From Octopus bimaculoides (Eukaryota), in the NCBI RefSeq assembly GCF_001194135.2, contig NC_068999.1:2112834-2176833 (forward strand): 64,000 bases of DNA. Reading direction: 5' to 3'. Within the stretch, counting starts at the first letter, position 1; each line of letters starts with the position of its first letter. Positions 31,284 through 32,399 of this stretch are shown piece by piece. The notes beneath the pieces were generated by a model. The model worked only from the letters and a program-made list of their open reading frames with translations, was not told the DNA's origin and made no database searches. The translations under genes were made by a program, and so were the position numbers.

Positions 31284-32399
31284 TCAAAACACCGTCTTTT
31301 TGACATGACATACTGGTTGAGTATGTTCCTTATTTGCGTTCAAATTTTCATAGTCTACACCGGAAAATTTAACAATAGTATTTAGTACTTTGCTAACCTG
31401 CTCTAGAGCATTGAGCAGTGTTTGAGAGAAAATTACATTATTACTACTTAGAGTACCTTTTTGAGCAGGTGTCAAACCCATGTCACCTGTTTGTGCCGTT
31501 CTGGTGCCGTCCTTCAGTGTCGGTGACTTTGATGTTTCACACTGCGGTGAGCGACTCTGCGTTTCTATTGCCGAAACTGATAATGAAGCAGAACCTTTTT
31601 TATTGCGTTTCCTTTCTTTTTTGAAGGGCGAAGCACCAGGCAGAGCTTGATAACTCTTTGATGCACTACGAGAACTAACCGGCTTTTTCATGTTCTCTTC
31701 AATTATATTCAAACTTTCGGATGGGTTTAGGTCAAGTAATGGTTTTATCAAAGAGTTCCGAGATGGTTGTCTGGTAAGTAACAATGAAGGACATTTTGAG
31801 TCCATGTGATATTTCTCGATGATTCTCTGATGTAGCTTCCGTTTTTCCATTTGGAGTTTTCTGCTTCCAGTAATATCTGTTCGCAGCTTCATTGTTAATG
31901 CCATCGGTAATTTAAGGCGACCAATTGTTCGATCGTGTATATTGCCCAGCTTCCGATTGCTTTTGTTTCCTATGTCTACAAAGTTTCGAACTTGGCATTT
32001 TGAACGAAGCTTAGAGATGCTATACGGCTGGCCGACGTAATTAGCTTCAAAAAATAACTTGAACCATCGTCCGAAATAAAAGTTGTCCTTGAAAGTCATC
32101 CGCATCATATTCTCCATTGGAATGTTTTTGATGATTCCGAGTTCATTGAAAATGCACTGAAGACACTTGAAATTGTGATATTTATCATAATCCGTCAGGC
32201 CGCCAATCCGAACTTTTCTTAGCGAAAGTGATCCCGGGAAAAGGATTTCCATTCCAAGACAAAGGTCTGTTCCACTTCCAAGTTCACCAATGTCTTTCAT
32301 TTCTGGGCAAAGAGTTTCCTGAAGCCAGTTAATCAGGGTTTCTTTGCTAATGTTATGTATCCCCTGAGACTGTGTATTCGTGACAACTTGCATCTCCAT
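31284..32399 (-). CDS. MAPRE1-like: Intronless divergent EB1/RP-EB family microtubule end-binding-like protein (371 aa): N-terminal EB-type CH domain plus novel basic Ser-rich C-terminus
   Basis: Residues 16-126 align without gaps to human EB1 14-124 as recalled (about 44/111 identical: LFPGS, KV, NFK.LQ, K.IP, F.DNF.F..WFK.FF.ANY.G..Y); uninterrupted ORF; start context AACAAAATGG; no EBH motif or acidic EEY/F tail. Symbol denotes family, not orthology. Confidence 0.9.
   Translation of the reverse strand: MEMQVVTNTQSQGIHNISKETLINWLQETLCPEMKDIGELGSGTDLCLGMEILFPGSLSLRKVRIGGLTDYDKYHNFKCLQCIFNELGIIKNIPMENMMRMTFKDNFYFGRWFKLFFEANYVGQPYSISKLRSKCQVRNFVDIGNKSNRKLGNIHDRTIGRLKLPMALTMKLRTDITGSRKLQMEKRKLHQRIIEKYHMDSKCPSLLLTRQPSRNSLIKPLLDLNPSESLNIIEENMKKPVSSRSASKSYQALPGASPFKKERKRNKKGSASLSVSAIETQSRSPQCETSKSPTLKDGTRTAQTGDMGLTPAQKGTLSSNNVIFSQTLLNALEQVSKVLNTIVKFSGVDYENLNANKEHTQPVCHVKKTVF

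What the first reader, a model, noticed from the sequence alone, without database searches (positions are those of the whole stretch)
31284..32399. Intact, intronless, highly divergent EB1-family gene: probable retrogene with a new function
This is the only real gene in 64 kb. Its CH domain is unmistakably EB-type but only ~40% identical to human EB1 by eye, whereas canonical animal EB1 CH domains are much more conserved. Canonical EB genes are multi-exon, so one uninterrupted 1.1-kb ORF suggests retroposition. An open frame, Kozak context, poly(A) signal and promoter motifs amid decayed DNA argue for a functional gene. Divergent germ-line EB paralogues are known in Drosophila and an atypical male-gamete EB1 in Plasmodium; a cephalopod-specific, possibly sperm or cilia-related, paralogue is my inference.
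Basis: partly seen in the sequence, partly recalled or inferred. Interest (0 to 1): 0.8.

Follow-up and report, generated by a model that had tools for sequence, protein, structure and literature searches.

The report
Divergent octopus EB-like microtubule gene
This is a real, evolutionarily maintained Octopus bimaculoides gene for an unusual relative of the microtubule end-binding protein EB1: it keeps the microtubule-binding head, has lost the partner-recruiting tail, and belongs to an apparently undescribed family of intron-free EB-like genes seen so far only in squid, cuttlefish and octopus.

Summary
Window 31284-32399 (-) is an intact 371-aa ORF, 100% identical over 315 aa to an NCBI Octopus bimaculoides model. 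Residues ~15-135 are an EB-type CH domain (E~1e-25 to EB1/EB3; rmsd ~1.1 A), 31-39% identical to canonical EBs. It is not a pseudogene: orthologues are intact in two other octopuses and two more distant cephalopods, dN/dS is 0.06-0.12 (CH) and 0.29 overall, and the 130 nt before the ATG are 98-100% conserved. It is not a canonical EB: no EBH domain, no EEY/F tail, a basic rest of protein (pI 10.2 vs 4.6), and Lys at the near-invariant Gln (EB1 Q102 / Mal3 Q89) whose mutation moves Mal3 from tips to lattice. It sits in a clade (97% bootstrap) of divergent EB-like genes whose named members are all coleoid; every locus examined (five paralogue types) has a single-exon CDS. So retrogene origin is plausible only as an old, family-level event, and an annotated isoform splices from inside the ORF. 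Best reading: a lattice-binding or bundling MAP like Drosophila Mst27D (inferred). Tissue is unknown; the sperm idea is untested. Moderately interesting; new variant of a known kind.

The parts
32518..32560 (-). Upstream CRE-like cluster: GACGACGTCGTC (32560-32549, -161), TGACGTCA (32542-32535, -143), TGACATCA (32525-32518, -126)
   Evidence: This is the only TGACGTCA in 64 kb (about 1 expected by chance). It is at the same offset in O. vulgaris and a third octopus. There is a full site at -131 in the P0005 species and a half-site at -118 in the P0006 species, whose flanks are otherwise unalignable.
32400..32529 (-). Ultra-conserved core promoter / 5'UTR, including TATATAA at 32492-32486 (-93) and Kozak AACAAAATGG
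   Evidence: 99/99 identical O. bimaculoides vs O. vulgaris and 98% vs the third species, against 89%/80% in the upstream flank and 92-95% in the CDS. One search gives the motif positions.
31284..32399 (-). Complete single-exon CDS, 371 aa plus stop (read-through isoform)
   Evidence: Orthologues: O. vulgaris 89% aa (L001 10001-11110) and a third octopus 83% (L002 699-1814), both uninterrupted. dN/dS 0.29-0.31, Fisher p 2e-7 to 2e-10.
31995..32357 (-). EB-type calponin-homology (CH) domain, aa ~15-135
   Evidence: E 2e-25 to EB3/EB1. (pLDDT 92-98). (rmsd 1.1-1.3 A to EB1/EB3). (omega 0.06-0.12). (16 of 36 near-invariant canonical positions changed, including Q102->K104).
31449..31994 (-). Basic, Ser/Lys/Arg-rich, mostly disordered linker, aa 136-317. 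Contains a predicted helix at 180-198 and the NLS-like KKERKRNKK at 260-268
   Evidence: pI 10.2 for aa 136-371, 41 K/R vs 19 D/E, no SxIP. (pLDDT <50 except the helix at 180-198). (omega 0.35-0.44, p 1e-3 to 9e-6).
31359..31448 (-). Conserved amphipathic C-terminal helix, aa 318-347 (SSNNVIFSQTLLNALEQVSKVLNTIVKFSG)
   Evidence: helix 320-346, pLDDT 77-86. (30-31 of 32 residues identical in three octopuses). (L328, A331, Q334, K337, L339, T341, I342 invariant, including the distant orthologues). (no similarity to EBH, hhalign prob <1%).
31455..31456 (-). Internal GT splice donor used by NCBI isoform X2 (exon ends at 31457, after codon 315)
   Evidence: The sequence CAAAAAG|GTACTC is conserved in all three octopuses, though the site is also coding.
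25947..25990 (-). Alternative terminal coding exon of isoform X2 (..G|ALKQLTFHDTPDF*), preceded by ctctttgcAG and followed by AATAAA at 25872-25867
   Evidence: It matches P0002 exactly. Conservation in other species could not be tested because the O. vulgaris locus ends at window ~26636.
31093..31098 (-). Poly(A) signal AATAAA, 186 nt after the stop codon
   Evidence: The surrounding GATTTAATAAACGATCTCT is conserved in O. vulgaris.

Best explanation
The locus is a live Octopus bimaculoides gene for a 371-aa divergent member of the EB (RP/EB, MAPRE) family. Its architecture is an EB-type CH domain, then a long basic disordered linker, then a short conserved amphipathic C-terminal helix. It has no EB-homology (EBH) domain and no acidic EEY/F tail. 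It belongs to a clade of EB-like genes whose named members are all coleoid cephalopods and which all have uninterrupted coding sequences. The clade most likely descends from one old retrocopy (or intron-less duplicate) of a full-length EB gene that then multiplied by DNA duplication. Some branches kept the EBH domain; this branch lost it. Inferred mechanism: the CH domain still binds microtubules, but the protein binds along the lattice rather than tracking growing ends. It cannot recruit SxIP or CAP-Gly +TIP partners and probably cannot pair with canonical EBs. The C-terminal helix mediates self-association or docking to a partner, so the protein would act as a stabilising, bundling or linking MAP, as Drosophila Mst27D does. 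Shown: gene integrity, selection, domain content, family position, promoter conservation. Inferred: microtubule-lattice binding, oligomerisation, retro-origin. Unknown: tissue and partner.
For: Gene reality: intact ORF. Intact orthologues in O. vulgaris, a third octopus and two more distant cephalopods. NG86 omega is 0.06-0.12 in the CH domain, 0.35-0.44 in the linker and 0.29-0.31 overall, with Fisher p down to 3e-12. Positions -130..-1 are 98-100% identical against 80-89% in the flanks. The CRE is conserved at the same offset even in distant orthologues. EB-type CH. No EBH: Pfam finds only a weak CH hit. hhalign of the subfamily C-terminus against EBH gives prob <1%, while the EBH-retaining cephalopod group scores 98%, E 1.4e-13. 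Tail: the protein ends KKTVF, and the non-CH part has pI 10.2 against 4.6 in a canonical EB1. Buey et al. 2011 (PMC3154886) showed that the acidic C-terminal domain suppresses lattice binding and that replacing it with a neutral coiled coil gives stable lattice association. The Gln that is 97% conserved in 61 canonical EBs (EB1 Q102) is K/K/M/R/R in this subfamily. It corresponds to Mal3 Q89, and Q89A shifts Mal3 from plus ends to the lattice (PMC10199041). K89, N104, W110 and the hydrophobic core are kept. C-terminal helix: pLDDT 77-86, with a 3-4 hydrophobic repeat conserved across the subfamily. Family: the cephalopod core clade has 97% bootstrap and this subfamily 90%. Named members are all Octopus, Argonauta or Sepia. 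Single-exon CDS at every locus examined: window, L001, L002, L006, L012, L013, L014, L015, L017 and L016 6951-7892. Analogue: Mst27D (PMC10359004).
Against: There is no expression or protein evidence of any kind. The Logan contigs are genomic, and neither isoform is on record in the contig index. Microtubule binding, lattice preference and oligomerisation are all inferred. 16 of 36 near-invariant CH positions have changed, including charge changes at K34 and E36, so the CH domain could have a different ligand. Position 104 varies within octopuses (K, K, M), so it may simply be unconstrained. The canonical octopus EB gene and its introns were not retrieved, so the retro-origin lacks a demonstrated parent. 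No poly(A) tract was found at the 3' end. Clade monophyly rests on NJ of 120 columns, and long-branch attraction among fast-evolving sequences is possible; support for all divergent forms together is only 67%. The decapodiform identity of P0005/P0006 is indirect.
Confidence: 0.6

Rival explanations
1. It remains an autonomous plus-end tracker. Lacking EBH and EEY/F, it would occupy EB sites at growing ends without recruiting the +TIP network, acting as a natural competitor or dominant-negative of canonical EBs in some cell type.
For: The CH fold and several key residues (K89, N104, W110, the F/W core) are kept, and the domain is under very strong purifying selection. In Buey et al., tip binding was not affected by C-terminal charge changes. 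The distant orthologues keep an EEY/F-like EYYDEF tail.
Against: The Gln that distinguishes tip from lattice binding in Mal3 is replaced. The strongly basic remainder (pI 10.2) should add lattice affinity. Mst27D, which has similar architecture, binds all along microtubules.
Confidence: 0.2
2. The CH domain has been repurposed away from microtubules, for example to a nuclear or chromatin-associated role or to another filament. The NLS-like basic cluster would direct the protein to the nucleus.
For: KKERKRNKK at 260-268 and KRK at 186. 16 of 36 near-invariant canonical positions are changed, including the charge reversal K34->D/E. Plasmodium and Toxoplasma EB1 are nuclear.
Against: The nuclear apicomplexan EB1 still binds spindle microtubules. 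Foldseek finds only EB-type CH domains close to this one. Basic Ser-rich linkers are typical microtubule-binding regions.
Confidence: 0.1
3. Origin rival: the intron-less state reflects intron loss, or an ancestrally intron-poor duplicate spread by DNA duplication, rather than retroposition of an mRNA.
For: No poly(A) tract was found. A tandem pair exists in Argonauta. Internal tandem duplication of the CH domain (P0004, P0008) is a DNA-level event. The parent gene's structure was not examined.
Against: Every locus examined, across five paralogue types and five species, has a completely uninterrupted CDS. The copies lie on different chromosomes. Canonical metazoan EB genes are multi-exon (established knowledge, not tested here). 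The probable ancestor carried the CH domain, EBH domain and EEY/F-like tail, i.e. a full-length mRNA-like copy.
Confidence: 0.25
4. It is a young processed pseudogene, or a chance ORF, with no function.
For: It sits in repeat-rich, gene-poor DNA with a microsatellite directly after the stop codon. There is no expression evidence.
Against: omega is 0.06-0.12 in the CH domain and 0.29 overall at dS 0.18-0.31, with p down to 3e-12. The frame is intact in five species. The promoter/5'UTR is more conserved than the CDS.
Confidence: 0.02
5. It is the species' ordinary, only EB gene.
For: NCBI names it 'RP/EB family member 3'. I could not retrieve a canonical octopus EB with the tools available.
Against: It has no EBH domain and no EEY/F tail, and only 35% CH identity to canonical EBs. 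At least one further EB-like gene is present in O. bimaculoides (P0004), at least three in O. vulgaris and at least seven in Argonauta. The EBH-retaining paralogues show that this one is derived.
Confidence: 0.03

Closest known systems
Canonical EB1/EB3 (MAPRE1/3), Mal3, Bim1
   Same: The N-terminal CH domain is of the EB type: E 2e-25, rmsd ~1.1-1.3 A, with K89, N104, W110 and the hydrophobic core kept. The general layout is CH domain, linker, C-terminal helix.
   Different: It has no EBH domain and no acidic EEY/F tail. The C-terminal part is basic instead of acidic (pI 10.2 vs 4.6). The Q102/Q89 Gln is replaced by Lys. CH identity is only 31-39% where canonical EBs share ~63% with a vertebrate reference. 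The CDS is a single exon.
Drosophila Mst27D (spermatid-specific EB1-like protein; PMC10359004)
   Same: An EB-type CH domain with a C-terminal part unrelated in sequence to EB1 that still carries a helical or coiled-coil segment. It is a lineage-specific divergent EB paralogue. Mst27D binds along microtubules rather than at tips, dimerises through its C-terminal part and bundles microtubules, which is the behaviour predicted here.
   Different: The origin is independent (insect vs cephalopod), and no orthology was tested. Mst27D's partner (Nup358) and testis specificity are demonstrated, whereas nothing is known here. The octopus protein has a much more basic linker and only a ~30-residue helix.
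Plasmodium EB1 (PMC10199041)
   Same: [quoted passage not shown] It functions in male gametogenesis.
   Different: PyEB1 is the organism's single EB orthologue, keeps the coiled coil and keeps the conserved Gln (Q106). The octopus protein is an extra paralogue that has changed that Gln and lost the EBH domain.
EBH-retaining cephalopod paralogues (Argonauta P0012, O. vulgaris L016 6951-7892, Sepia pharaonis P0168)
   Same: They belong to the same cephalopod core clade (97% bootstrap), have a single-exon CDS, and share CH signatures such as PME.MM..F.DNFYFG.WFK.FFEANY.
   Different: They keep Q102 and a bona fide EBH domain (hhalign 98%). A direct sister relationship to the window subfamily is not supported (27% bootstrap).

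Membership tests
EB (RP/EB, MAPRE) family | N-terminal CH domain of the EB type | tested here: met
   phmmer E 2e-25 to EB3/EB1 chains. The AF2 CH domain has pLDDT 92-98. The Foldseek top 15 are all EB1/EB3/Bim1/Mal3, and other CH types score E > 0.1. The generic Pfam CH model gives only 16.7 bits, below its cut-off of 26.
EB (RP/EB, MAPRE) family | C-terminal coiled coil plus EB-homology (EBH) domain, Pfam PF03271, which forms the SxIP-binding pocket | tested here: not met
   No PF03271 hit at E <= 1. hhalign of the subfamily C-terminus against canonical EBH and against cephalopod EBH gives prob 0.3% and 0.1%. The positive control (cephalopod EBH group vs canonical) gives 98%, E 1.4e-13.
EB (RP/EB, MAPRE) family | Acidic C-terminal tail ending in EEY/F (CAP-Gly binding) | tested here: not met
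   The octopus proteins end in KKTVF, KKKYA and KKTVF. The distant orthologues P0005 and P0006 end in EYYDQF and EYYDEF, so the tail was probably ancestral and lost in octopuses.
EB (RP/EB, MAPRE) family | Near-invariant Gln of the FQDNFEF motif (EB1 Q102 = Mal3 Q89), linked to tip-versus-lattice discrimination | tested here: not met
   Gln in 97% of 61 canonical EBs; K, K, M, R, R in this subfamily. The Mal3 numbering was verified against PDB 5mjs_D. The functional statement comes from PMC10199041.
EB (RP/EB, MAPRE) family | Autonomous tracking of growing microtubule plus ends; homodimer | not testable with these tools
   This needs TIRF reconstitution or live imaging, plus SEC-MALS. All that is available is a predicted amphipathic helix at 320-346.
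Retrogene (processed, retroposed gene copy) | Uninterrupted CDS | tested here: met
   The 371-aa CDS is one exon, as in every orthologue and paralogue examined. However, annotated isoform X2 uses a 5.5-kb intron starting inside the ORF.
Retrogene (processed, retroposed gene copy) | A multi-exon parent gene elsewhere in the same genome | not tested
   The canonical cephalopod EB could not be retrieved. The word-indexed protein search does not reach it from this query, and no octopus genome can be searched with these tools. That canonical metazoan EB genes are multi-exon is established knowledge only.
Retrogene (processed, retroposed gene copy) | Remnant poly(A) tract at the 3' end and flanking target-site duplications | tested here: not met
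   Downstream of the stop there is a (GA)n microsatellite, then unique sequence with AATAAA at +186, and no A-rich tract. Target-site duplications were not searched for. At the inferred age of the family these marks would be expected to have decayed, so their absence is weak evidence.
Mst27D-like lattice-binding EB paralogues (functional class, not a homology family) | EB-type CH domain plus a non-EBH C-terminus with a helical self-association segment | tested here: met
   The comparison is with the description in PMC10359004. Orthology was not tested and is not expected.
Mst27D-like lattice-binding EB paralogues (functional class, not a homology family) | Binding along the microtubule lattice, bundling, male-germline expression | not testable with these tools
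   No expression data or biochemical assay was reachable.

The most novel reading that the evidence does not exclude
Coleoid cephalopods carry a previously undescribed, retrogene-seeded radiation of EB-like genes: at least seven loci in Argonauta, including forms with two tandem EB-type CH domains and a 695-aa coiled-coil form. In this radiation the plus-end-tracking CH domain has been converted repeatedly into lattice-binding or crosslinking MAPs. The window gene would be an old branch, shared by octopuses and decapodiforms, that lost the EBH hub and serves a specialised microtubule array such as the spermatid manchette, the flagellum or neuronal bundles.
Probability: 0.3. Interest if true: 0.65.

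Novelty: new variant of a known kind. Interest (0 to 1): 0.5.

Why it matters
EB proteins are the master adaptors of growing microtubule ends and are among the most conserved cytoskeletal proteins. Natural variants that keep the CH domain but drop the adaptor half are rare, and they are informative about how tip and lattice recognition are encoded. Only a few have been studied (Drosophila Mst27D, Plasmodium EB1). This octopus gene combines, in nature, two changes that experiments link to more lattice binding: replacement of the Q102/Q89 Gln, and loss of the acidic C-terminal domain, here replaced by a basic region. It has been kept under selection since before octopuses diversified, and probably since before they split from squids. 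It also points to a lineage-specific expansion of intron-free EB-like genes in coleoids, which I did not find described in the searchable literature. The expansion may relate to cephalopod-specific microtubule structures and adds a case study of retrogene-driven family growth outside vertebrates and flies. All functional statements remain predictions.

Tried and rejected
1. I first took the near-identical-length Logan contigs (L002-5, L007-11) for transcripts, which would have shown expression. They are colinear with the genome and end in (AT)n, (GA)n or homopolymer runs, so they are genomic contigs broken at repeats.
2. Exact look-ups of the window protein and of spliced isoform X2 in the contig index found nothing, so there is no expression evidence.
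3. AlphaFold2 with the 5-sequence alignment was useless (pLDDT 34). It was repeated with 45 sequences.
4. I tested whether the conserved C-terminal helix is a degenerate EBH domain. hhalign says no (prob <1%), and by-eye similarities to 'VLNT'-type motifs in P0011 and P0020 were not pursued.
5. A CH-domain profile census with the search for homologous proteins returned zero hits. This looks like tool behaviour, and it cost one search.
6. The P0005 query found no named decapodiform orthologue. Taxon placement of P0005/P0006 therefore rests on the co-assembled P0019 being closer to Sepia.
7. Accession searches in the literature identified only the Argonauta assembly.
8. The first bootstrap run was invalid because of NaNs from the Kimura correction. 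It was redone with Poisson distances.
9. P0078 (a 27-kb multi-exon model in O. vulgaris) looked like a counter-example to 'all intron-less'. The locus in fact contains an intact 313-aa single-exon ORF orthologous to P0012, so the model is probably mis-annotated.
10. TGACGTCA occurring once in 64 kb is not significant in itself. Only its positional conservation is.
11. The canonical octopus EB gene could not be reached with any available search.
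Full report
**1. What is there**

The window carries an ATG-to-stop ORF of 371 aa at 31284..32399 on the minus strand, exactly as reported. No other N-free stop-free stretch of at least 70 codons in the 64 kb exceeds 217 codons. Those with a recognisable family match or motif are transposon relics:
- mariner DDE_3 at 60166-60816;
- zf-RVT at 53381-53854;
- GIY-YIG at 33701-34066;
- mariner-like and LINE-like C-termini recognised by eye only.

About 11% of the window is N-masked repeat. 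The window holds no second copy of the gene and no canonical EB exons. [quoted passage not shown]

**2. Gene structure**

The 371-aa CDS is one exon. Isoform X2 leaves the ORF at a GT donor (31456, after codon 315). It joins an AG acceptor about 5.5 kb downstream, at a terminal exon (25990-25947) that encodes ALKQLTFHDTPDF* and has its own AATAAA. 'Intronless' is therefore true of the long CDS but not of the locus.

Upstream features:
- Kozak context AACAAAATGG;
- TATATAA at -93;
- a cluster of CRE-like palindromes at -161, -143 (TGACGTCA) and -126.

Downstream, a (GA)n microsatellite starts 10 nt after the stop, and an AATAAA at +186 is conserved in O. vulgaris.

**3. Is it alive?**

Yes, on three independent grounds.

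(a) Orthologues with intact, uninterrupted frames exist in O. vulgaris (P0001, 89% aa), in a third octopus known only from Logan genomic contigs (P0003, 83%), and in two more distant cephalopods (P0005 and P0006, 57-59% in the CH domain).

(b) Nei-Gojobori dN/dS among the three octopuses, at dS 0.18-0.31:

| Region | dN/dS | Fisher p |
|---|---|---|
| Whole gene | 0.29-0.31 | 2e-7 to 2e-10 |
| CH domain | 0.06-0.12 | 2e-8 to 3e-12 |
| Linker | 0.35-0.44 | 1e-3 to 9e-6 |
| Last 56 codons | 0.6-1.7 | not significant as a block |

Within those last 56 codons, the helix at 318-349 is 30-31/32 identical, while the final ~20 residues vary.

(c) The 130 nt before the ATG are 100% (O. vulgaris) and 98% (third species) identical. 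That compares with 89%/80% in the upstream flank and 92-95% in the CDS. A TGACGTCA lies at almost the same offset in the distant P0005 orthologue and a half-site in P0006, although their flanks no longer align.

The young-pseudogene reading is refuted. I found no expression data. The Logan contigs that looked like transcripts are genomic contigs broken at microsatellites, and neither isoform is in the contig index.

**4. What the protein is**

- **CH domain (residues ~15-135).** This is an EB-type CH domain. phmmer gives E 2e-25 to EB3/EB1 structures. An AlphaFold2 model from a 45-sequence alignment has pLDDT 92-98 there. Its top 15 Foldseek PDB hits are all EB1, EB3, Bim1 or Mal3 CH domains (crystal and cryo-EM EB1/EB3 hits at rmsd 1.1-1.3 A), with other CH types at E > 0.1.
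- **Divergence.** It is 31-39% identical to 61 canonical EB CH domains, which average 63% to a vertebrate EB1-like reference.
- **Rest of the protein.** It is not EB-like. Pfam finds no EB1 C-terminal domain. A profile-profile comparison of the subfamily's C-terminus with EBH domains gives probability below 1%, while a related cephalopod group scores 98% (E 1.4e-13) as a positive control.
- **Tail and charge.** The protein ends KKTVF, not EEY/F. Residues 136-371 have pI 10.2 (41 K/R, 19 D/E), against pI 4.6 for the same part of a canonical EB1. There is no SxIP motif, and there is an NLS-like KKERKRNKK.
- **Conserved element outside the CH domain.** Across the whole subfamily the only one is an amphipathic helix at 320-346 (pLDDT 77-86) with a 3-4 hydrophobic repeat.

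**5. Changes inside the CH domain**

Of 36 positions at least 85% conserved in canonical EBs, 16 differ in this subfamily. These include R17->K/H, K34->D/E, E36->G, E106->Y, Q109->R/C and Q102->K/K/M/R/R. K89, N104, W110 and the aromatic core are kept.

EB1 Q102 is the Gln of the FQDNFEF motif and equals Mal3 Q89. I verified the Mal3 sequence and numbering against PDB 5mjs_D. According to PMC10199041, Q89A shifts Mal3 from plus ends to the whole lattice, and this Gln is conserved in EB1 proteins of all eukaryotes examined there.

Separately, Buey et al. 2011 (PMC3154886) showed that the acidic C-terminal domain of EBs suppresses lattice binding by electrostatic repulsion. Replacing it with a neutral coiled coil gives stable lattice association without affecting tip binding.

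The octopus protein carries the natural equivalent of both manipulations, and goes further by having a basic tail. This is the basis for predicting lattice binding. It is an inference, not a result.

**6. Family context**

An exhaustive profile search of 1.84 billion representatives found 1643 EB-family hits. About ten scored above the plateau where most other EB-family hits lie. Every one of the clade members that carries a name is a coleoid cephalopod:
- Argonauta hians: P0009, P0012, P0013, P0017, P0077, P0093;
- Sepia pharaonis: P0168;
- O. vulgaris: P0008, P0078;
- O. bimaculoides: P0004.

Bootstrapped NJ on 120 CH columns (93 sequences, 300 replicates):

| Grouping | Support |
|---|---|
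| Window subfamily, including P0005 and P0006 | 90% |
| EBH-retaining group | 93% |
| Cephalopod core clade containing both | 97% |
| All divergent forms, including the two-CH-domain proteins | 67% |
| Window subfamily as direct sister of the EBH-retaining group | 27% (not supported) |

Long-branch attraction cannot be excluded.

The clade includes proteins with two tandem EB-type CH domains, a 695-aa coiled-coil form, and a tandem gene pair in Argonauta. I found no description of this expansion in the searchable literature. The giant-squid genome paper notes a 'MAPRE1' gene inside the Hox cluster, which may be one of these copies.

**7. Retrogene?**

Every clade locus I could examine has a completely uninterrupted CDS:
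- the window gene and its orthologues (L001, L002, L006);
- P0004 (L012);
- P0008 (L013);
- P0012 (L014);
- P0019 (L015);
- P0013 (L017).

The one apparent exception is the 27-kb multi-exon model behind O. vulgaris P0078. It hides an intact 313-aa single-exon ORF (L016 6951-7892) with full CH and EBH domains, so the model is probably wrong.

The copies lie on different chromosomes. Some members keep CH + EBH, and P0005/P0006 keep an EYYDEF-type tail, so the ancestor looked like a full-length EB. This pattern fits one old retroposition followed by DNA-level duplication (tandem pairs, internal CH duplication).

P0019 comes from the same assembly as P0006 and is closer to Sepia than to octopod sequences. 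That suggests both subfamilies predate the octopod/decapodiform split.

Three things are missing: a demonstrated multi-exon parent, a poly(A) remnant (none was found), and target-site duplications (not searched for). I therefore rate retro-origin as plausible (~0.6) at the family level. I reject the idea that this particular locus is a recent retrocopy.

**8. Most likely mechanism and rivals**

- **Best reading (0.6 as a package; about 0.5 for the lattice-binding step).** It is a microtubule-lattice-binding MAP that cannot act as a +TIP hub. Its conserved C-terminal helix mediates self-association or partner docking, so it would stabilise, bundle or tether microtubules. This is the behaviour shown experimentally for Drosophila Mst27D, which has the same kind of architecture.
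- **Rival 1 (0.2).** A tip-binding but non-recruiting competitor of canonical EBs.
- **Rival 2 (0.1).** A repurposed CH domain, or a nuclear role.
- **Refuted.** Pseudogene, and 'the only ordinary EB'.
- **Untested.** The sperm/testis idea. The conserved CRE + TATA promoter is compatible with it but is not specific.

**9. Verdict**

The gene's existence is already in NCBI's automatic annotation. Three things appear to be new:
- it lacks the EBH/EEY half of an EB protein;
- it carries lattice-favouring changes;
- it belongs to an intron-free EB-like radiation seen so far only in coleoids.

I class it as a new variant of a known kind, of moderate interest (0.5). Experiments are needed before any functional claim.

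Noticed in passing
window 31180-31270: A (GA)n/(CT)n microsatellite starts 10 nt after the stop codon. It occupies the same place in O. vulgaris and the third octopus, where the Logan contigs break at it. It lies inside the presumed 3'UTR, upstream of the AATAAA at 31098-31093.
   Followed up: partly
window 60166-60816 (+), 5653-5955 (+), 33701-34066 (-), 53381-53854 (-): Transposon relics: a Tc1/mariner DDE_3 fragment (E 1e-13); a second mariner-like C-terminus (by eye, no Pfham hit is claimed: no Pfam hit); a weak GIY-YIG match (E 4e-4), possibly Penelope-like; and a zf-RVT fragment. About 10.7% of the window is N-masked (25 runs).
   Followed up: partly
L012 3001-4326 (O. bimaculoides P0004); L013 3001-4287 (O. 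vulgaris P0008): Two kinds of single-exon cephalopod genes encode proteins with two tandem EB-type CH domains. As far as I know this architecture is not described for EB proteins. P0004 ends in an EBH-like remnant (KLQRIETICRNNPDEGICLMIWKVL).
   Followed up: partly
L017 6001-8088 and 13559-14088 (Argonauta hians): The 695-aa EB-like gene with a long coiled coil (P0013) and the 355-aa P0077 are tandem neighbours 5.5 kb apart on the same strand, with consecutive accessions. This shows DNA-level duplication within the family.
   Followed up: partly
L016 3001-30110 (O. vulgaris OX597818.1): The annotated 27-kb multi-exon model CAI9723583.1 (P0078) is probably mis-built. L016 6951-7892 is an intact 313-aa single-exon ORF with a complete CH domain and EBH motif, orthologous to Argonauta P0012.
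   Followed up: yes
P0005 / P0006 (L007 315-1304; L006 10001-10978): The probable decapodiform orthologues end in EYYDQF and EYYDEF, an EEY/F-like tail that could still bind CAP-Gly domains. Octopus orthologues end in KKTVF or KKKYA. The source species of these sequences could not be identified.
   Followed up: partly
literature, PMC6962438: The giant squid (Architeuthis dux) Hox cluster is reported to contain a non-Hox gene annotated MAPRE1. It may be one of the intron-free EB-like copies rather than the canonical gene.
   Followed up: no
tool behaviour: the search for homologous proteins given alignment A2 (20 raw CH-domain sequences) returned no hit at E <= 1e-10, although several members are in the database and score above 180 bits with single-sequence queries. 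I treated this as a tool limitation, not as evidence.
   Followed up: no
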